From the NCBI RefSeq assembly GCF_000002075.1, contig NW_004797693.1, positions 266,969 through 330,968 of the forward strand: DNA of 64,000 bases. The letters run 5' to 3'. The DNA comes from Aplysia californica (Eukaryota). Under the pieces are notes generated by a model. That model had not been told where the DNA came from and ran no database searches. It worked only from the letters and a program-made list of their open reading frames with translations. Shown here in pieces: positions 9,833-63,954 of this stretch (positions are counted from its first letter, which is position 1; every line of letters begins with the position of its first letter). A program made the position numbers and the translations under genes.

Positions 9833-9995
9833 TGGATGGTTGACGGGCATTTTAGAGTAATTTGCTAATTCTTTCCTATCAAACATTTATCTTCTTTTTC
9901 TCTGCTTCTTTTCGTTGTATCTTACTCTCTAGAAACACCTCTTTTCCTTAGCACTTATGAACAAGTGCGGTAATACTCTTCCTAAAACTAAAACT
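9833..9995 (+). mobile_element. Family A copy, degenerate
   Basis: cctatcaaacat...gcacttatg...ctaaaactaaaac. Confidence 0.7.
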
Positions 9996-10069
9996 CTTTC
10001 TCTCTCTCTTTTTTTCCTTTTTCCTTTTTTGGGTCACTGCACTTAAACTCTCTCTTTCTCTCTTTCTCT

Positions 10070-10120
<51 letters not shown>

Positions 10121-10187
10121 TTTTTTTTTTTTTACATTTTCCTCCTTTTTTAGTCACTAACTGCAATGACCTCCTCTTGTTTGACAG

Positions 10188-10289
10188 CTGAGTTCCTATG
10201 GTGGTTACCTGACCTTTACCCTCAAGTATAGTCTGGATGATCAGCTGTCTGGTGGATATCACCTGAGGGAACCCAATTTGGTGCTGGAG
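10188..10289 (+). CDS. LAMA1/2: Laminin alpha exon 9, L4a (LSSYGGYLTFTLKY...PNLVLE)
   Basis: tgacag / gtgagc, 102 nt, SYGGxL motif. Confidence 0.93.
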
Positions 10290-20301: not shown

Positions 20302-20411
20302 ATTGTGATTGTTATGGTCCTGGTACGAACAACACTGTGACATGTGACCCGTACAGTGGGCGATGTCAGTGCCGCCCGGGTGTCATGGGTCGGCAGTGTG
20401 ATTCTTGTAAG
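20302..20411 (+). CDS. LAMA1/2: Laminin alpha exon 17, LE (CDCYGPGT...GVMGRQCDSCK)
   Basis: tttcag / gtaagg, 110 nt, phase 1-0. Confidence 0.93.
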
Positions 20412-20470
20412 GTAAGGTGGCTGTAGAAGGATGTTATGTTATCTGTGTGTGTGTGTGTCTGTGTGTGTGT

Positions 20471-20512
<42 letters not shown>

Positions 20513-21045
20513 GTATGTGTGTGTGAGTGCGCACGCATGCTCGTGCATGTGCGTGTGCGTGGTTTGGCAAGGATTATCTGGGGGGAAAGGATTATATGGG
20601 GGGGGAAAAAAGCAAGTGTTGATATACAAAGTATTGGACAATGGAGGTACAGAGGGATGCACAGTGAGAAAGAGGGAGGGAGTGAGGGAAGGAAAGAGAG
20701 AGAGAGAGAGAGGCAGAGACAAAGGGAAACAAATAGATAATATTTGAAGCTTTTATGCCTTGTAGTATGATCTAAGAAATAATTGTATTTCTTCTATTGC
20801 GTACCCCTGCTAGAGCTCAAGGGGTAACCTGACTGGTAGATCTTCATCCCTTAGGATAAACGATATTTGATACATTTCTGACCGTTTGATCCACTAAAAT
20901 TGTAGAATCTTCCATTACCTGACAGGCAGCCATATGCCAATTTTAAAAGTAGGTTACTCTTTAATATCTATACTGTCTAGAATTATTATAGTACTACTTT
21001 AACAAAATGTCCTTATTAAAGAATTTCTTATCTACTTGGTTCTAG

Positions 21046-21490: not shown

Positions 21491-22393
21491 TTGGTAGATA
21501 GATAGATAGAGAGAAATAGAGAGAGAGATTTTTCAGCCTGAATTGACACTGGTATTCATGTATTTATAGCACATTTTCCAACACGATTATAGTGTACTTT
21601 TCCTTTTAAATTTCCGCTCACAGGTACTTTCATTGGTGTATAAAAAAAAAATTAACAGACATGCGCCTGTTCAGTTTTTACTAGCTATTGTCTCAGAATT
21701 TTGCTTGGATATCTTTTCGTGGCTGATCTGATCTTCTTCAACTTTCTGCTGCTTTGGTGTTAGGTGCATGCTCAAACTTTTGTGTTTTGGTCTTATTGTG
21801 AATATTAGTCATGAGATCAGGGCTGTGAAACGTTCAATACCCCCTTCCCCCCCCTCCCCCCCCAACAAATATGCCTGCTGTAATTTGAGATTAGCTTAAA
21901 TACAGTTGAAACTGTCTGAGATGGCCACCCATTGTCGGGAAGTATAGCGGTTATTTTAGACAGGTGGATTTCTTACACAGTGTCATTATAATGTAGACAA
22001 TACACAAAGGAGGAAATGGAAAGTGGTTGTTTATACAGGTGATTGTTTTATTATTTTTGTGCAGATGACTACTAGAGTGGGTTTGGTTGAACTTTGTTGT
22101 GGGAGACCTGTACCGTCAATAGCTCCTTGATAAGACCTTTGTTACTGTAGTTATTGTAGACCCATACTTTGATGAGAGGAGGCACCACGCTATATGAGGG
22201 AGGTTTGAGGGTGCAACTTATAAGTCCCACTTTTTCTCCTTCTCTTCATTATTTCTGTTTATCTGTCTTCCTTTCTCCCTGTGCTAAGTAATCGTTATTG
22301 TGTCAATGTACTTCCGTACCTCCCCCCCTCCCCCACCCCTCACGCTGATATGCATAGCTTTACTCTTTAAAAAATTGTCAACTTTCGTCACAG

Positions 22394-22533
22394 CCTGTGA
22401 GCCATGCAACAAACCCGGACATATCTGCAACCCTGACACAGGGAAATGTGAATGTCCACCCAACACTGAGGGCCCGAACTGTGAGGTGTGCATCAGGGAT
22501 TGTTGGGGCTTCACCAAAGACCAGGGCTGCAAG
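22394..22533 (+). CDS. LAMA1/2: Laminin alpha exon 19, LE (CEPCNKPGHIC...KDQGCK)
   Basis: tcacag / gtcagt, 140 nt, phase 1-0. Confidence 0.94.
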
Positions 22534-23350
22534 GTCAGTTGGCTGCTTCACGTGCTCCTTTATAGAGTAGAATCTTTTGTTTTGCACTTACTTTTGTCTG
22601 TCTTTTTTTTGTTCAATGCAGTTTGGGATTATGAATTGGTCCACTCTGTTCTTTTTAAAAGATGAATAGTTGGCTTTATTTCTTAATTTTTATAGACTGT
22701 TGTTGTTTTCTAGTTTTTTGAGTCTCATTCTCAGCATTATGCAGGGCTGCTGTTGTCAGTGATGTCCTCTTCTCTCTAGGATCTCTTTGAATTGATGCGT
22801 CTAAATGAGTGCTAGCTTTCAACTAAAATGTAACCTTTTCTCTTTGAAAAAAAGAAGAGAATTAATTTTTGTCATCATGTTAACAATAGCCACAATTACC
22901 GCTGCTTTGAGCTTTTGATTTTGCTTAATGTGAAGTTTGCTCTTAACATTAAACAGCTGACAATTATTTTTATTGAAGTTGACAAGTGTTTCTTCCAAAC
23001 AGAATTTGCCCTCGCAGATAATGTCTAAAAATTCCTTTGATTATAAATGACGTGAGTGTTGGTCAATAGATTGGTAGAAACCTAGTAAATGGCAAAGCTG
23101 TCTTTTCTTTTAGCCTAAAAGATATGCAGATTCAACTTCTAATTTACTTTATGAAATCTATGAATAATATATTATTAATATAATTCTCGGTAGAAACAGC
23201 TTTCAGTTAAAATCTTACATGTCTCTCGTACAGCAAAAGTTATACTAAGGTGTTAACCTGTTATTGCGTAATAGCAATTTCAATTATATATATTGAGTGG
23301 GTATTCAGCAATTCTTTGAAAAACATTCGGGTGTTTTGATTTTTCACTAG

Positions 23351-23512
23351 AAAAGTGATTTGAGAAAGGCGTCTAAGAAGAGAAAGCAAGAGTGCAGGAG
23401 AAGAAGGCGGAGAGGCAGAGGAAAAAAGAAAAATGGCAAAAATAGAGGGAAGAATGATAAAAAGAGGAGAAGGAGGAGAAGGAGAAAGAGGATGAAAAGA
23501 TGTAAGGCTAAG
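23351..23512 (+). CDS. Candidate cassette exon encoding a 54-aa polybasic insert (KSDLRKASKKRKQECRRRRRRGRGKKKNGKNRGKNDKKRRRRRRRKRMKRCKAK)
   Basis: ttttcactag acceptor, AAG/gtgaga donor, 162 nt. Open only in the phase-0 frame, which matches the host intron. Confidence 0.6.
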
Positions 23513-26051
23513 GTGAGAGGTTCTGACTGCTAATGGTACAAGTTGGCATGCAAGAATTAACCAAGTGTCTGAGATGATGAATCAAGTCCAGAGAGGTCAT
23601 GTTGATGTTTTCTCCAAAAGTTCCAGTTGCATGATTATCGTGTCTTACTTTAATGTTGTATAATATATAACATGGATGGACTTGGCATAAAAGTGATCGC
23701 AGCTGACAGAGGAAGGAGTTGATTAATTCATTGAATTGTTTTATTGGAACTAATGGGCCAAGCATTAAAATAATTGTGACATGCAGAGGAAGAGGAGAAG
23801 AGGAAGAGGAGAAGAGAAAGAGAGAGTGATTAAATTCTTTTGCCTGAGCAAGATGAGTATGCAGAGTTTAACCCAACCCTGATGCTGTTAACGTGGATGA
23901 TGTTTTTGCATTAAAAAAGAAGTGACTGAGATACATGCGAACTTATTGCCCTTCGGCTAAGGATGTAGTTGGCAGTTTTATGTGGATTTCTGGCAAAAGA
24001 ATGCTAAGGCTTGTAGTTTGTCTGCAGGCTGGCAGGGAGGGTGTATACTGGCCAGTGGTAGGCATACATCATTCCAAAGTTTAGACATGAAGAGACAGCT
24101 AAAAAAAGAGGTGTTGATGTTTGAATGTCAGAGACTTGTTTAAAGAAAGACTTCTTGTATTCAAAGCTCAAAATATAATTTTTTCTTTAAAGATCACATC
24201 ATATGGGACTATGGAATATGATTTTATTTTAAAAAGAGTTAGAGTTATAATTATGAGGTTAATGGTGTGAAAACACGAATGTCAGACAACTGTGACACTT
24301 TGATATTAATTTTATATGGCTTAATTGGATTGTACTTTATAGTCTTGAACGGAGAAGAAATTATCATTTCACAGAATTCATATCTGAATTTCATGTGTGT
24401 TGTCAATTTGAGCAATTACCTCATATTCATCTCTTTGCCAATTTTAATGAAACCACAAAGGCAAGCAGTATTACTTAGTAATTTGCGTAATGTGAAAGGA
24501 GCGAGTCTTAGTACTGAGAATACAAATGGTGGTAAAAAAGTAAAAAACTGACCATTAATCCACAACGAGGCAGTATTTGTGACTGAAAGTTTTCAGTGGT
24601 ATTCTTACGTAAACTTTGCTTTTCATTCAGCTGCTCCTACCCTTTTGTTCTAAGCTGACAGAGCTTTGCAATACACTCAAGAGTGTTCTATCCCGTGATG
24701 CACTTTTGAAGACCTGACAATATACCTTTTAACTTTCTTCTTGTTGTTGTGAATAGTGCCATGAAAACCTTTTGCAATTTTGTTCCTTTGAACTTGAAAT
24801 AAGTTTCATCCTTTAAGTTTTGCACTTATGTGTTCCTTTGGTGTCTTAAACCCGTCTGCTATGCCAACAGCTTATAATTAAGATTCAGTTTTGGGAACAC
24901 AATGGTGGCAAAATGTTCTTAATTAAAAAGATCAAATAGTAAAATTTGTATATTGAATGAAAATGCATATTGTATTGGAATAACAGGAATAAAATTGTGA
25001 TTTGAAATGAAAAGTTTGACAATGCGTTTTAGTTTGACAGACGTAAGATCCCTCATCCCCCCATCTCCACAATGCACAGAAACTAGTGTCTGGATGTGGC
25101 AACAACCAGCTGTTGCCCTTGATCATACTCTGGAGTTTTATTTTTATATTGAGAGCATTAGTTTTGATTTTTAATACAAAGTCATGCCCCCCCCTCTCCC
25201 CCCAATAATGTTTAATTAAAGAAAAGAGATATTATTGTGGTCCTAGTGCTGTTGGCAAAGCAGAATTAAAAGACAGTGGCCTGCACAAGGCACTCATGTT
25301 TTATTGTTGTTGGTTCCTAATGAATGCACTAACAGTTTTTTTCTGAAAATTGGGCATTCCAAGCAAATGCTTAAATTCATTTTACAAGAAGCTGCTTTCA
25401 TTTCTTACTTTTTAACATTTTAATGTGTATCATTTATCATTTGCTTGGTGTCCATACTTTGGTCTTGGATCAATGTTGAAAAATGAATTTTTGTTTTTTA
25501 GAAAGAAGATGGTGTCGAGAAAGACTTTTTGAATGATTGTTTTCCTCCTGATTATTTTGAAAGTAAAAGTTCTTCTTTCAAGGAAAGCACCAAAAATGTA
25601 GATGCCAATTTATTATAGGAAAGAAGCTTCGCCAAGAATAAATCAGCTGGATTTCAGAAGAAAAAAAAATTTAATGTTAAGAGTATGATTTGTTATTCAG
25701 TTGTTCCAAATTCACAAATAAGTCTTTTCCATTTAAACTTTTGTTTCTAGTGGAAAGAGGGATATAGTTCATTTCAATGAATAGAAGTAGGCGACTTTAA
25801 TTTTTTGCCCTGTCAAATGATTTGTATATCATTCAGTCGGTACTTTTCTTTTCAAAATTGTTGATACTCAGTTTGAGAAAATAATCATTCACAGTATAAT
25901 CCTCACCATCTTCTTTGATGCTGCAAGCCTTTTTAATTTTGTCCTCCCTTAAAAGACTTAGACTCTCACACCGAGGTGGTAACGGTACCCGGGGAATGTG
26001 GTGTACACGTCGTGTGTGTGTTGTATTGCCTAACCTCCCGTTGGTTTTCAG

Positions 26052-26279
26052 CCATGTAACTGCAGCCAGTCAGGCTCCGCCTCCCAGCAGTGTGACCCAC
26101 TAACGGGTGCCTGCTCCTGTCTGGAGGGCTACCAGGGCTATAGCTGTGACCAGTGCCTGGTCAGCTTCTATAACTTCCCTGACTGTACGTCCTGCGGCTG
26201 CAATGAGACGGGAGTCATTTCCGACACGTGTATCACAGGCGTGTGTGAGTGTGATGGCATGGGACAGTGCTTTTGTAAG
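26052..26279 (+). CDS. LAMA1/2: Laminin alpha exon 20, LE (PCNCSQSGSASQQCDPLTG...GQCFCK)
   Basis: tttcag / gtaatc, 228 nt, phase 0-0. Confidence 0.94.
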
Positions 26280-28432
26280 GTAATCATCGTCGGATCGGAT
26301 GGCGGACTATTATGTTGTGATCTGCGAGAAGTCAGTACAGGTGTTAATGCATGAAAAGAAAATGAAGAGTTTCTAGCAGAGCTTATATAGGTGGCTTTGC
26401 TTGCGTCCGGGACTTAGGGAGCAGATAAGGCTGTTTCATAAAAGCGAGAGTGTTCATAAGACGTTTAGAGAAAAGATTGTTGTCAAAGGTAGGGGCACTT
26501 TCTCTACAGAGTATGGTGCTGCCTTTAGTTTAGGGTGTCTGCAATGTGTTGATCCTTCTGCAGATTACATCGGGGTTAAAGGGGTAGAACGTTCAAGCCT
26601 GGGCATAAAATTATGCGTTTTTCATTGAGTTTGGAGATGGCTCGGTTATAATATTAGGATTGAAAAGTTTAGAATATGTTTTTAGCCTAAAAACGAAGTT
26701 GTTTTTAAAAAAATTCAAAATCTTGTTATGAAACAAACGATGTGTTATATTAACTTTTAACGGATCGATAGCTGTCTTTGTTCATGAGGTTAAACAATGA
26801 AACTTTTAGAAAAGTGATTCTTAACTTTGTTAGTCCTGGAGGCTTGTAGCCGTTCCAGCGATTTGCCCTTGTGCTTCCTATGGTTAGTATTCGTGTGCTG
26901 CAGGTCAAAAATTGCGTATAATGAACAATGCTAAGCTTTGTGAGTGGTGAGCTAGAGGATTCATTGTTTTAAACGGGTTTGTACTTGGCTGTGGTGTCCT
27001 CAGCTTTGAAAGAATTGAAAGAGTCATGCTAGTATTCTCTACGATGAGGCTTCTGTATCTCCTTTGAACCTTTCGCAAAAATGACAGGGTTTTTCCCCAT
27101 CTGTTTTGAATTTGTCCCATAATTAGTATGCAACCTTCTTCGAAGTAAATAGATTTAAATAGTAATTACTATGATCGCTGCTACTAATTCTTATTGATGT
27201 TATTGTTGGTTTAAAGCAAGAGCTTTGTGCCTTTCTTTGTTCGTGTACGAGCTTACTATTTTTGTAATACTAAGGCTTTGTCCCTGACCTTTTTCTATAC
27301 TCTAATAGAAGACGAAATGCTTGCTTGTTAAGCGTATGTCTATAGCCTGACAGTTAAAAGAGACTAATTATAATTAGAATAATCAAAGCTTCTGACAGTT
27401 TTTTTTATAGGTATGTTCTTGCGCTATTCAGTTGTTTGCCATTTCCTTCCTGCAAATTGCAGCTTTTTGAGCATTTTTGCATTCCCTTGCTGTCCAATAA
27501 AGACATTCATTTAGATGTGCTCGATTAACTTGATATGAATTATATTTTTTCATCTAAAATTGTTTGGTTAATTTTGGATGTTGTTCTAAAAAATGCAATT
27601 TGTGAATCAACTCAAGCTTTTTTTATGTTGTGTGTGAGAGGTACCTTTTTGGCACTAACTTTATTGTCATTCCCATTCCTTGCACGATTCTAATACTTAA
27701 ATTTCACATTTTATGTGGGCCTTGGATTACACATGCATGAAAAATTGGTGGGCACGTTGATTTTTGCAAAATTCTGACGGTAATCGATGTATTTTAGCTT
27801 TTCTCTTATGGAAACAGNNNNNNNNNNNNNNNNNNNNNNNNNNNNNNNNNNNNNNNNNNNNNNNNNNNNNNNNNNNNNNNNNNNNNNNNNNNNNNNNNNN
27901 NNNNNNNNNNNNNNNNNNNNNNNNNNNNNNNNNNNNNNNNNNNNNNNNNNNNNNNNNNNNNNNNNNNNNNNNNNNNNNNNNNNNNNNNNNNNNNGAGACA
28001 GACAAATTTACGATTGGAAGGGTGGGAACAAGAGAGGATTAGACGGAACGAGAGACAGTTAAACAGGAAAAGTACAAAATAAGCTTTTGGGAAATAAGAA
28101 GAAAACTAGTTTGAGTCTGATAGAAAGAGGATACTGATGAGAAAGAAGATATATAACTGTTCTCCAGGAAGGAAACTTGGAAACTTTTGACAGGTTCTGG
28201 CTGTGAACAAGGACATTTACTGCATAAGCGATACAGAGATTATCCTTATTTGGTGACAGTGCTGTGTTGTGCGTCTGAAGAGTAGAGCTCAAAATATAAA
28301 AAGAGTCTTATATGATTATGTTTCACAGATATTCTGATCTTAGATTATGATGTACTCTCAAATACCAAAATATTTTTTAAGCGTTCATTTTTATTTTGGA
28401 CCTACATAGAACCCCCCCCCCCCACCCCACTC

Positions 28433-28470
<38 letters not shown>

Positions 28471-28584
28471 TTAACTTTTAACTTGGGGGTACATTAACTA
28501 CTGTTATTTGAGTCCCCACACTGCACCATAGTCCTTCTTTTGTAAACTGTACATCTTAACATCTGCGTTCAGAAGTAGGCCTAC

Positions 28585-28700
28585 ACCGATGCCGGCCTGG
28601 CACCTTCAGCCTGGATGGAAATAATCCGAAAGGCTGCACAGAATGCTATTGTTTTCTCCGGGCTCAGCAATGTATGCAGGCGCCCTATGTGTGGAAAGAG
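28585..28700 (+). CDS. LAMA1/2: Laminin alpha exon 21 (RCRPGTFSLDGNNPKGCTECYCF...YVWKE); 5' boundary unresolved
   Basis: Clear LE coding sequence and gtaagc donor, but about 9 expected N-terminal codons and a phase-0 AG acceptor are absent; an N gap lies upstream. Confidence 0.85.
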
Positions 28701-28748
28701 GTAAGCTGTACACTCAAGTGAGGAAAAAAAAAGAAAAGGACTATTTAA

Positions 28749-28974
28749 CCCTATCCGTACGCCCTGGGGTCCTTTTGTACATCCGGGGTTGTATTCTTCA
28801 CATTTTAGAATACTTCTAGTTCGAAGATCTCTTTGAAACTTTCAGTTTTTCTCAAAAAATCATTTTGACAGACTGCTGTGCAAAGCGGACGGATCAGATA
28901 ATGAGTAAATTTTCTCTTTGGAAAGTAGTGGCACCAAAGACCGTGTTATAGGAAAACACAACGTACGGAGAGGG
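28749..28974. mobile_element. piggyBac-like MITE
   Basis: TTAA/CCCTATCCGTACG ... CGTACGGAGAGGG/TTAA. Confidence 0.8.
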
Positions 28975-29022
28975 TTAAAACAAAAATGCCTGCTGATTAA
29001 TTTTATTCTTTAATTGGTGGTG

Positions 29023-29081
<59 letters not shown>

Positions 29082-30356
29082 ATGCTATTGTAATTTGTGT
29101 TGATGATGTTGCTGCTGTTGCGTTTTTTTAAATTGGTCTTTTGGTGTGTCTGATTTTGATTTTTGAATGATATTGTCATTGTTGTAGTTATGTAGTACTT
29201 TTGTTTTGTTTTGTTTCCTATAAAAGTGTATATTATATGTATTTGTANNNNNNNNNNNNNNNNNNNNNNNNNNNNNNNNNNNNNNNNNNNNNNNNNNNNN
29301 NNNNNNNNNNNNNNNNNNNNNNNNNNNNNNNNNNNNNNNNNNNNNNNNNNNNNNNNNNNNNNNNNNNNNNNNNNNNTGAATGGTTGGTGAAGCCCTGCTT
29401 GAAGGTGAACATTTCTAGACAAACATTCACACATAGCTGAAAAGGGTAATCTTTCTTAAACATATTTCACTTTATTTGTATCCAATTAGAGGACTTCGTA
29501 AAACGTTATGGCACTTCAAAGGTTTACAGTAATTTTCATTCTCTGCTTTTTCTCCTATGTTTTTTTGTCAAACCTGAATCATAGCTATTTTGGTGCATAG
29601 AGGTTGTCTAACTTTTACCAAAATATTTACCTGAAATCTTAAATATATATGATTTTTTTTTCAAATCTCTGTTTTGCTGCAGTAATTGTTTACACTTTCA
29701 TAATGGAGCTCAACCACAATATGTCATTTTTATCAAAATGGCTTTAAGTGGAGATATAGTGTTTAAGCAAAACCCGGCAGGGGTAGTTGGAGGATGGCAA
29801 TGGTGGGACCAACTTCTTATTTTTCCTGAATTGTTTCGATCTGTCCGTTTAGCTTGTTCTCAGCTGTAAGACTAACTGTTATTGGGTTGAGGTTACATGC
29901 AACCGACTTTGGGTTGTTTTTTTTTTGTTTCTTTGTTTCATATTTACTTAATCGTGTAACACCAGTGGAACCGACCATACCTTTGAATGACAATATTCTT
30001 TATGTAGGGCTATTGCAAGCAGTACCCGTTTCTCTTACTCTGAAGATGACTTTATTAGAGTGTTACTTCTCAAATCTGAGGATTATAGCGATATGGAAAG
30101 TCTTTAAATGTACTATATATATATATATAGTTGCACAATACCAACCACACCAAGCTTTTTAAAATCACTAAAAATCAAGACATTCAACCTGTGGATCCCT
30201 TTTTAAAACATTGATACACAAGAGTGAGGCTCCAACAAATTTGCCCAAGAGTTTGAAACCAGTAAGTTTTGACAAATTTGACCTGTCTTGCTGTCACACA
30301 TTCAATCATTTTTACTTCTGTGACCCCCTCAATGTGCTTCTCTGTAATTCGAACTG

Positions 30357-63509: not shown

Positions 63510-63954
63510 GTGAGCTGTACATCATTTTTTTTAGCTGAAATTTTTGTTTTAGTGTTCATGTGTGGGCAGTGGCTTTGGTAAACCTGATAGAATGGGCCCA
63601 GCCTTTTGTAGAGACACAGTCCGCAACCATAAGATACTGACTTGGTATTAAACTGGAATCCCTGTCATGTTTTGCCTTTCTTTATTTCATTTGTTGTTGT
63701 TTTTTTAAATTGTAATAACAAAGCGTAAAAAAATTGACAGTATGTCTACACATTGAAAAAAAATTTGGTTTTAGCAGAATCATAGCGATATTGCCCAAAA
63801 ATGTCTGAGAAAGCAATTCCCCATTTTTTATATGGAAAAATATGTGGTAAAGCCTAATACAGTCTCAAAATCTCTTGAGTTGAAGTAAACACTATCCTTG
63901 TAGTTGTGGTTCTATTATAGTAATTAATAAAGAACTTTATCTCTGTGTTGGCAG

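What the first reader, a model, noticed from the sequence alone, without database searches (positions are those of the whole stretch)
23351..23512. Hidden polybasic, Cys-bracketed cassette exon between two LE modules of laminin alpha
Seen: inside the 3.5-kb phase-0 intron between ...DQGCK and PCNCS... lies a 162-nt segment with acceptor ttttcactag and donor AAG/gtgaga. It is open only in the phase-0 frame; the other two frames hit TGA within 4 codons. It encodes KSDLRKASKKRKQECRRRRRRGRGKKKNGKNRGKNDKKRRRRRRRKRMKRCKAK: 35 of 54 residues are K/R, and two Cys (positions 15 and 51) bracket the basic run. It falls exactly at an LE-LE boundary, so LE disulfide pairing is undisturbed. Established: alternatively spliced basic exons in VEGF-A (exon 6) and PDGF-A (exon 6) act as heparan-sulfate/matrix retention signals, and RxxR/RxKR motifs are proprotein-convertase sites. 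Inference: this could be a splice switch that adds a glycosaminoglycan-binding loop to the short arm, or a furin-cleavable loop whose halves stay joined by the Cys pair. I know of no such insert in described laminin alpha1/2 chains.
Basis: partly seen in the sequence, partly recalled or inferred. Interest (0 to 1): 0.9.

Follow-up and report, generated by a model that had tools for sequence, protein, structure and literature searches.

The report
Unannotated polybasic laminin exon, conserved in snails
A 162-base stretch inside an intron of the sea hare's laminin alpha gene is most likely a real, unannotated optional exon that adds a very positively charged loop, because freshwater snails have a matching exon at the same spot; its use in the sea hare has not been shown.

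Summary
Window 23351-23512 (+) is a 162-nt frame that is open only in the intron's phase. It has acceptor TAG| and donor AAG|GTGAGA, and it encodes 54 residues with 35 K/R and two Cys, placed between C8 of one laminin EGF-like (LE) module and C1 of the next.

Taken alone this is weak evidence. The tract is 86% purine, three of six frames are open, and similar pseudo-exons occur about once per 3.4 kb of this gene's introns.

Comparison with other species changes the picture. The gene is Aplysia californica laminin alpha-1/2-like, and both database models skip the segment. In Biomphalaria glabrata and Bulinus truncatus the same intron holds a 117-nt, phase 0-0, K/N/G-rich exon that is already in database models. 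Biomphalaria RefSeq isoforms exist with and without it. Physella acuta has a homologous tract with an in-frame stop. Aplysia-Physella similarity exceeds composition (z=4.8; reciprocal unique best 30-mer).

Conserved features are the basic charge, a Cys 3-4 residues from the exon end, the strong donor and a downstream GCAUG. The Arg runs with furin-type motifs and the first Cys occur only in Aplysia.

RNA reads could not be examined, so inclusion in Aplysia is inferred (about 0.6). This is a new member of a known kind (alternatively spliced basic matrix-binding exons).

The parts
22394..22533 (+). Exon A: one complete LE module (C1..C8-K), ending in phase 0 at ...DQGCK|gtcagt
   Evidence: Spliced mapping of Aplysia protein P0311; translation
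23331..23350 (+). Candidate acceptor region gtgttttgatttttcactag| : a pyrimidine-rich tract ending in TAG. Weak, 2.24 bits.
   Evidence: 26 of 32 real acceptors end in CAG and 6 in TAG
23351..23512 (+). Candidate cassette exon: 162 nt, phase 0-0, 54 aa, 16 K + 19 R, net charge +32, Cys at 15 and 51, 86% purine
   Evidence: orthologous exons L002:20743-20859 (Biomphalaria) and L003:30011-30127 (Bulinus), and the Physella tract L005:63771-63881
23461..23497 (+). In-frame 9-nt (3-codon) tandem repeat GAGGAGAAG, which produces the RRRRRRR run
   Evidence: Tandem Repeats Finder
23492..23521 (+). Conserved 3' end of the exon plus donor (..MKRCKAK|gtgagaggt): 23/30 identical to Physella L005:63861-63890. 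Reciprocal unique best match.
23513..23518 (+). Donor GTGAGA (AAG|GTGAGA), 10.45 bits, stronger than 97% of the gene's real donors
23546..23550 (+). GCATG 34 nt downstream of the donor (Rbfox-type intronic element). Also present at +29 in Biomphalaria and +26 in Bulinus.
   Evidence: background is 1.06 per kb in this gene's introns
26052..26279 (+). Exon B: 76 aa, phase 0-0, one LE module plus the first half of the next. Its Biomphalaria equivalent is itself skipped in RefSeq isoforms X4 and X5.

Best explanation
Window 23351-23512 is an unannotated, alternatively included cassette exon of the Aplysia californica laminin alpha-1/2-like gene. It is orthologous to a polybasic exon already modelled in planorbid snails and dates back at least to the common ancestor of Aplysia and the freshwater pulmonates (Euthyneura).

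It has the anatomy of a regulated exon: a weak TAG acceptor, a near-consensus donor, purine-rich (GAR-type enhancer-like) content, and a GCAUG about 30 nt downstream. When included, it inserts a disordered segment of net charge +32 between C8 of one LE module and C1 of the next, in the LEb rod just before the second laminin-IV domain. This would break the rigid rod with a flexible, highly cationic hinge.

The most likely function is electrostatic binding to sulfated glycosaminoglycans or other polyanions, i.e. matrix or cell-surface retention. In Aplysia specifically, the expanded Arg runs would also make it a proprotein-convertase substrate.

Shown: the sequence anatomy, the orthologous annotated exon and its presence or absence in snail isoform models, and conservation beyond composition. 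Inferred: inclusion in Aplysia mRNA, regulation, and every biochemical function.
For: - Same intron, strand and phase, and a frame-preserving length in four species: 162 nt in Aplysia, 117 in Biomphalaria, 117 in Bulinus, 111 in Physella. The exon lies 817, 856 and 846 nt after exon A in the first three.
- Biomphalaria models: RefSeq X4 (P0196) and three GenBank models include the exon. RefSeq X1-X3 and X5 skip it, as do the UniProt model P0198 and the B. pfeifferi model P0197.
- Between Biomphalaria and Bulinus, the exon plus about 60 nt on each side is the only conserved island of the intron: 246 nt, 77% identity, E=7e-49. There are no indels in the exon, and the differences fall 4/5/13 by codon position.
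- The Aplysia and Physella peptides score z=4.8 above composition-preserving shuffles, p<1/3000.
- The Aplysia 30-mer spanning the exon end and donor has a unique best hit, 23/30 against a next best of 19, in the 100.9-kb Physella locus, inside the orthologous intron. The reverse search gives the same pair.
- In intron-versus-intron blastn, the best hit of the Aplysia intron in Biomphalaria, Bulinus and Physella is always this exon, and the alignment reaches the donor in one of the top hits in each species.
- A profile of the three snail exons has its top hit in the 64-kb window here: 33.8 bits against 21.4 for the next hit, with the composition correction off.
- All four species keep a Cys 3-4 residues before AAG|GTGAG.
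- The frame is open with P about 0.03-0.04 given the composition, and the donor outranks all 1825 decoys.
- GCATG lies at +26 to +34 in three of the four species, against a background of 1.06 per kb.
- The segment is single copy in the genome.
Against: - There is no transcript evidence in Aplysia.
- Both Aplysia protein models, P0204 and XP_035827254.1 (P0311), join ...DQGCK directly to PCNCS....
- Aplysia-planorbid peptide similarity is not significant beyond composition, z about 1.5.
- With HMMER's composition correction switched on, the profile hit disappears.
- The acceptor is weak.
- The Physella copy has an in-frame TAG, and the sacoglossans Elysia and Plakobranchus lack the tract. The exon is therefore dispensable and has been lost repeatedly.
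- The Aplysia copy is inflated by a GA-rich repeat, which is also what a decaying sequence might show.
- About 100 laminin alpha proteins from other animals have no insert at this junction.
Confidence: 0.6

Rival explanations
1. Relic pseudo-exon. The tract descends from the same ancestral polybasic exon as the planorbid one but is no longer spliced into Aplysia laminin mRNA, or only at noise level. It would be drifting by GA-repeat expansion, as the Physella copy with its in-frame stop seems to be.
For: Both Aplysia database models skip it. The acceptor is weak. A 9-nt repeat expansion and R-for-K replacement are seen only in Aplysia. The exon has clearly been lost or damaged in Physella, Elysia and Plakobranchus.
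Against: The frame is intact over 54 codons (P about 0.03-0.04 by composition). The donor is near-consensus. The repeat period is a multiple of three. The 3' Cys-x-x-K|GTGAG block is retained at 23/30 identity across a split at which flanking coding exons are only 61-70% identical at the protein level. That argues for purifying selection until recently in the Aplysia line.
Confidence: 0.25
2. Chance. This is an ordinary purine-rich low-complexity intronic tract with fortuitous splice-like signals, and the resemblance to the snail exons is only shared composition.
For: The tract is 86% purine and three of six frames are open. Other purine- or pyrimidine-rich tracts lie in the same window at 20565-20750, 9951-10225 and 51006-51217. 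Nine open frame-preserving pseudo-exons occur in 30.7 kb of introns. Aplysia-planorbid similarity is not significant after shuffling, and there is no nhmmer hit with the composition correction on.
Against: Aplysia-Physella similarity is far beyond composition (z=4.8), and the two are reciprocal unique best 30-mer matches in the orthologous intron. The intron, phase, strand and terminal Cys plus donor are the same in four species. The other purine-rich tracts of the window score at least 12 bits lower against the snail profile.
Confidence: 0.08
3. Annotation artefact everywhere. Gene predictors picked up an in-frame GT-AG bounded ORF in planorbid snails, and no species really splices it.
For: The three GenBank Biomphalaria models and the Bulinus model may be largely ab initio. 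They leave an odd cysteine when the exon is combined with exon B.
Against: The RefSeq isoform set separates five splice patterns at this site, which is normally done from transcript alignments (the basis for RefSeq practice is my own knowledge). The exon with its flanks is the only conserved island of the Biomphalaria/Bulinus intron, and substitutions are biased to third codon positions.
Confidence: 0.05

Closest known systems
Polybasic exon of Biomphalaria glabrata laminin alpha-1-like (present in RefSeq isoform X4 XP_055884512.1 and GenBank KAI8787320.1) and of Bulinus truncatus KAH9488089.1
   Same: Same gene, same intron, same phase 0-0 and same strand. Lysine-rich, purine-rich coding sequence with an NGKN-type motif, a Cys 3-4 residues from the exon end, donor AAG|GTGAG, and GCATG about 30 nt downstream.
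   Different: 117 nt rather than 162. K/N/G-rich with 2 Arg rather than 19. One Cys rather than two. No R-X-[KR]-R motif. In RefSeq it is joined to the exon after exon B (exon B skipped); in Aplysia that join would run into a stop codon.
Alternatively spliced basic retention exons of VEGF-A (exons 6a/7) and PDGF-A (exon 6); from general knowledge, not tested here
   Same: A short, optionally included exon in a secreted protein that encodes a dense K/R cluster. Such exons confer heparan-sulfate or matrix retention.
   Different: No sequence relationship is expected. Here the host is a structural basement-membrane chain and the insert interrupts a rod of disulfide-locked LE modules. It is also much longer and more highly charged (+32).
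Agrin 'y' splice insert (KSRK), which confers heparin binding; from general knowledge, not tested here
   Same: A small basic alternative insert that changes glycosaminoglycan binding of a laminin-related basement-membrane protein.
   Different: Four residues inside an LG domain, against 54 residues between LE modules. Vertebrate, and neuron-specific regulation is established there but only guessed here.
Intronic GA-rich microsatellite / low-complexity tract
   Same: 86% purine, internal 9-nt repeats, and a second GA-rich repeat 270 nt downstream in the same intron.
   Different: It keeps one specific frame open, ends in a conserved Cys codon plus a consensus donor, and is conserved with other snail genera at the orthologous site.

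Membership tests
Conserved alternative cassette exon | AG acceptor and GT donor, with a length that preserves the frame and is open in the phase of the host intron | tested here: met
   TAG|...AAG|GTGAGA, 162 nt, phase 0, no stop. Donor 10.45 bits, acceptor 2.24 bits.
Conserved alternative cassette exon | Orthologous exon at the same intron position in other species | tested here: met
   Biomphalaria L002:20743-20859, Bulinus L003:30011-30127, and the Physella tract L005:63771-63881 with one in-frame stop. Aplysia-Physella z=4.8 and reciprocal best 30-mer. Absent from Elysia, Plakobranchus and Lottia introns.
Conserved alternative cassette exon | Transcripts both with and without the exon | tested here: inconclusive
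   Protein isoform models with and without the exon exist for Biomphalaria. For Aplysia only skipping models exist, and reads could not be examined.
Conserved alternative cassette exon | Conserved intronic flanks | tested here: inconclusive
   Clear between Biomphalaria and Bulinus, about 60 nt on each side. Between Aplysia and the others only the donor and a GCATG at a similar offset are shared.
Alternatively spliced heparin/HS-binding basic exon (VEGF-A exon 6/7, PDGF-A exon 6 type) | Dense K/R cluster encoded by one optional exon of a secreted protein | tested here: met
   K/R make up 65% of residues in Aplysia and 36-46% in the other three. Net charge is +10 to +32. The host is a laminin alpha chain.
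Alternatively spliced heparin/HS-binding basic exon (VEGF-A exon 6/7, PDGF-A exon 6 type) | Binds heparin or heparan sulfate and retains the protein in the matrix | not testable with these tools
   Needs heparin-affinity assays on recombinant LE fragments with and without the insert.
Proprotein-convertase (furin-type) cleavage loop | R-X-[K/R]-R motif in an exposed segment of a secretory protein | tested here: met
   Nine overlapping motifs in the Aplysia peptide.
Proprotein-convertase (furin-type) cleavage loop | Motif conserved in orthologues (expected if cleavage is the exon's function) | tested here: not met
   No motifs in Biomphalaria, Bulinus or Physella.
Disulfide-bracketed loop | Two cysteines flanking the basic run, conserved | tested here: not met
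   Two Cys only in Aplysia. The other three species have a single Cys near the exon end.
Rbfox-type regulated exon | (U)GCAUG within about 100 nt downstream of the exon | tested here: met
   +34 in Aplysia, +29 in Biomphalaria, +26 in Bulinus, none in Physella; background 1.06 per kb. Binding and regulation are not testable here.
Non-coding GA-rich low-complexity tract | No frame constraint and no conservation at the orthologous site | tested here: not met
   Frame open with P about 0.03-0.04. Conserved 3' block and peptide similarity to Physella.

The most novel reading that the evidence does not exclude
An ancient (pre-Euthyneura) optional exon converts the rigid LEb rod of the laminin alpha-1/2 short arm into a hinged, strongly cationic module. 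Its conserved terminal cysteine can stand in for C5 of the split LE module that follows, so the polybasic exon and the 1.5-LE exon B can act as alternative cartridges, as Biomphalaria isoform X4 suggests. In Aplysia, repeat expansion has added a second cysteine and multiple convertase sites. The result would be a cleavable, disulfide-held, glycosaminoglycan-binding loop, possibly switched on by Rbfox in muscle or neurons.
Probability: 0.25. Interest if true: 0.6.

Novelty: new member of a known kind. Interest (0 to 1): 0.45.

Why it matters
If the exon is used, Aplysia (a major neurobiology model) and the schistosome-vector snails Biomphalaria and Bulinus make a laminin isoform whose short arm carries a flexible, highly cationic insert. 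That would be a lineage-specific way to tune basement-membrane charge, glycosaminoglycan or growth-factor capture, and perhaps proteolytic processing.

It also shows that low-complexity purine tracts in introns can be old, selected coding exons that annotation pipelines miss. The current Aplysia gene models lack it. The practical result is a concrete annotation correction to test, and a defined pair of isoforms for heparin-binding and cleavage assays.

Tried and rejected
- Joined model. I did not search a spliced model of exon A + candidate + exon B. Exons were searched separately by reference.
- Peptide search. The 54-aa peptide found no candidate in the 5.8-billion-protein collection. That search only sees proteins of 30-95 aa, so it says little.
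- Pfam. No family matches the peptide.
- nhmmer with the default composition correction gives no hit at the candidate. Only with --nonull2 is it the top hit. I treat this as supportive, not decisive.
- Aplysia-planorbid peptide similarity is not significant after shuffling.
- Short Logan genomic contigs from unidentified relatives (L008, L009, L012) carry exon B but only up to about 1.5 kb upstream, and show no basic ORF. This is uninformative.
- Unavailable loci. The Lymnaea locus was not delivered because the gene is too long. Nucella and Littorina proteins are not on record.
- Rejected: an independent small gene. The ORF opens directly after a stop, and its only ATG is codon 48.
- Rejected: an antisense gene. 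The open minus-strand frames are the expected by-product of a pyrimidine-rich strand.
- Rejected: a repeat family or transposon. The segment is single copy in the 927-Mb genome.
- Literature searches found no description of such a laminin exon.
- Earlier scan notes on this window concern other places and did not bear on this finding.
- N runs in the window were left untouched.

Full report
**1. What is in the sequence**

- It has 54 codons encoding 16 K, 19 R and two Cys (positions 15 and 51). It is preceded by ...gatttttcactag and followed by gtgaga.
- The other two forward frames stop at codons 4 and 2.
- It lies in the 3518-nt phase-0 intron between exon A (22394-22533...DQGCK) and exon B (26052-26279, PCNCS...). 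These boundaries come from mapping the species' own protein model onto the window.
- Exon A is one complete laminin EGF-like (LE) module. Pfam's EGF_laminin match starts at residue 2 of exon B. An insert here would therefore fall between C8 of one module and C1 of the next.

**2. Is that more than chance?**

On its own, barely.
- The tract is 86% purine and contains a 9-nt tandem repeat. A second GA-rich repeat lies 270 nt further on.
- Two reverse-strand frames are also open.
- Several other purine- or pyrimidine-rich tracts occur in the window.
- I built splice-site matrices from 31 real junctions of this gene. The acceptor scores 2.24 bits, about the 10th percentile of real sites, and 222 of 1545 intronic AGs do as well. 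The donor AAG|GTGAGA scores 10.45 bits, above 97% of real donors, and no other of 1825 intronic GTs reaches it.
- Nine frame-preserving, open pseudo-exons with acceptable sites exist in 30.7 kb of this gene's introns.
- Shuffling gives P = 0.03-0.04 that this frame stays open given its composition.

**3. Gene and organism**

A phmmer search with exon B, followed by a word search seeded with the Elysia orthologue, recovered P0204 and P0311. P0311 is XP_035827254.1, 'laminin subunit alpha-1 [Aplysia californica]'. Both are 100% identical to exons A and B.
- Both models join ...DQGCK directly to PCNCS..., so the segment is unannotated in Aplysia.
- Pfam shows a laminin alpha-1/2 architecture. The site is at residue 1209, in the LE run just before the next laminin-IV domain. 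That domain's start (CTECYCF...) follows in the next exon.
- The tract is single copy in the 927-Mb genome.

**4. The decisive comparison**

About 100 laminin alpha proteins from across animals have exon-A-like sequence directly abutting exon-B-like sequence. The exceptions are two planorbid snails.
- Biomphalaria glabrata has GCK|PLETKKNGKKRKPNGKKDKNGKNGKNKNGKKNRKPKCWK|PCNCS.
- Bulinus truncatus has a 39-aa equivalent.
- In the Biomphalaria genome this is a 117-nt phase 0-0 exon, L002:20743-20859, with acceptor ...ttttaaaag| and donor AAG|gtgagg. It lies 856 nt after exon A. The corresponding distances are 846 nt in Bulinus and 817 nt in Aplysia.

The ten Biomphalaria cluster members split as follows.
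- RefSeq X1-X3, the UniProt model P0198 and the B. pfeifferi model P0197 skip the polybasic exon.
- X4 (XP_055884512.1) includes it but skips the exon-B equivalent.
- X5 skips both.
- Three GenBank models include both.

Between Biomphalaria and Bulinus, the exon plus about 60 nt on each side is the only conserved island of the intron: 246 nt, 77% identity, E=7e-49. The exon has no indels, and its 22 differences fall 4/5/13 by codon position. In planorbids this is, in all likelihood, a real alternatively used exon.

**5. Is the Aplysia tract the same exon?**

Physella acuta has a 111-nt tract in the same intron. It reads ctgctag|KPKEVKLNGKNSNERKMNSKK*NDTNERKNVKKCKSK|gtgaggg, in the right phase, but with one in-frame TAG.
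- Aplysia and Physella peptides align at z=4.8 above composition-preserving shuffles, p<1/3000.
- The Aplysia 30-mer covering ...MKRCKAK|gtgagaggt has a unique best match (23/30, next best 19) in the whole 100.9-kb Physella locus, inside the orthologous intron. The reverse search returns 23492 in the window.
- In intron-against-intron blastn, the top hit of the Aplysia intron in Biomphalaria, Bulinus and Physella is always this exon, and the alignment reaches the donor in one of the top hits in each species.
- A profile of the three snail exons has its best hit in the 64-kb window at 23413-23520. It scores 33.8 bits against 21.4 for the next A-rich tract, but only with the composition correction switched off.
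- Aplysia-planorbid peptide similarity alone is not significant, z about 1.5.

Taken together, position, phase, strand, composition, the terminal Cys codon and the donor argue for common descent.

By the NCBI taxonomy, Aplysia (Tectipleura) and the freshwater snails (Panpulmonata, Hygrophila) meet at Euthyneura. The sacoglossans Elysia and Plakobranchus (also Panpulmonata) and the limpet Lottia have no such tract in this intron. This implies origin by the euthyneuran ancestor, with later losses. I could not examine a caenogastropod intron.

**6. What is and is not conserved (and for GCATG)**

Conserved:
- strong positive charge (net +10 to +32);
- purine-rich coding;
- one Cys 3-4 residues before the exon end;
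- AAG|GTGAG;
- GCATG at +26 to +34 in Aplysia, Biomphalaria and Bulinus, against 1.06 per kb background. Physella, the copy with the stop, lacks it.

Not conserved:
- length;
- the Arg runs (19 R in Aplysia against 2 elsewhere);
- R-X-[KR]-R motifs (9 against 0);
- the first Cys.

The Aplysia-specific features arise from AGA/AGG codons in a 9-nt, three-codon repeat.

**7. Best mechanism**

A regulated cassette exon with a weak acceptor, a strong donor, enhancer-like GAR content and a downstream GCAUG inserts a disordered polycationic hinge into the LEb rod.
- The property shared by all species is charge. Polyanion or glycosaminoglycan binding, or matrix retention, is therefore the most economical function. 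This is by analogy with the basic exons of VEGF-A and PDGF-A and the KSRK insert of agrin (general knowledge, not tested here).
- Convertase cleavage with a disulfide clasp is possible only in Aplysia and is not the ancestral role.
- In Biomphalaria X4 the exon's ...KCWK is joined to KNVEGQKC.... There its Cys sits where C5 of the split LE module (...CFCK|KNVEG...) would be. This suggests the conserved Cys completes that half-module when exon B is skipped (inference).
- In Aplysia that join is not available. The next exon's acceptor (28573) is in phase 1, so any phase-0 donor gives AAG|AAG TAG. Inclusion would have to be followed by exon B, where the two Aplysia cysteines could pair with each other (inference).

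**8. Limits**

- No RNA reads could be examined.
- I did not search a joined spliced model. Exons were searched separately by reference.
- N runs were not touched.
- That RefSeq isoforms rest on transcript alignments is my general knowledge, not something verified here.

**9. Verdict**

The segment is very probably the Aplysia orthologue of a genuine snail laminin exon. I put current use in Aplysia at about 0.6, a recently decayed relic at about 0.25, and pure chance at about 0.08.
- It is a new member of a known kind, the alternatively spliced basic matrix-binding exons. It is already present but undescribed in planorbid database entries and unannotated in Aplysia.
- Interest is moderate.

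Noticed in passing
window 26280-26334 and 28573-28700: The exon after exon B has its acceptor (28573) in phase 1, so the canonical phase-0 donor at 26279 would read AAG|AAG TAG, a stop. The two Aplysia database models patch this differently. XP_035827254.1 extends exon B by 18 aa (VIIVGSDGGLLCCDLREV) to a weak donor at 26334. P0204 joins ...CFC to LHRC.... Compared with orthologues (KNVEGQRCxxC), the Aplysia exon lacks the C6 cysteine. This is either a real remodelling of this LE module or an assembly problem. An N run lies in this intron and was left untouched.
   Followed up: partly
L002 (Biomphalaria glabrata) 21844-22071: The exon-B equivalent (76 aa, 1.5 LE modules, phase 0-0) is itself skipped in RefSeq isoforms X4 and X5. 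In RefSeq the polybasic exon appears only together with exon-B skipping, which hints at a mutually exclusive pair of unrelated exons.
   Followed up: partly
L005 (Physella acuta) 63771-63881: The homologue of the polybasic exon carries one in-frame TAG (planorbids have AAG/AAA there) and lacks the downstream GCATG. An AG directly after the stop would allow a 45-nt in-frame mini-exon (NDTNERKNVKKCKSK).
   Followed up: no
window 20416-20750: The intron after the exon ending at 20411 starts with a long (GT)n repeat followed by another purine-rich tract (20565-20750) with long open frames. It served as an internal control showing that such tracts are common here.
   Followed up: partly
window 23785-23822: A second GA-rich tandem repeat lies in the same intron, with periods 6, 8 and 14, none of which fits an in-frame expansion (8 and 14 are not multiples of 3). 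This contrasts with the period-9 repeat inside the candidate exon.
   Followed up: no
L004 (Elysia crispata) 25874-29842, minus strand: A retroelement (RVT_1, integrase rve) sits inside an intron of the Elysia laminin alpha gene.
   Followed up: no
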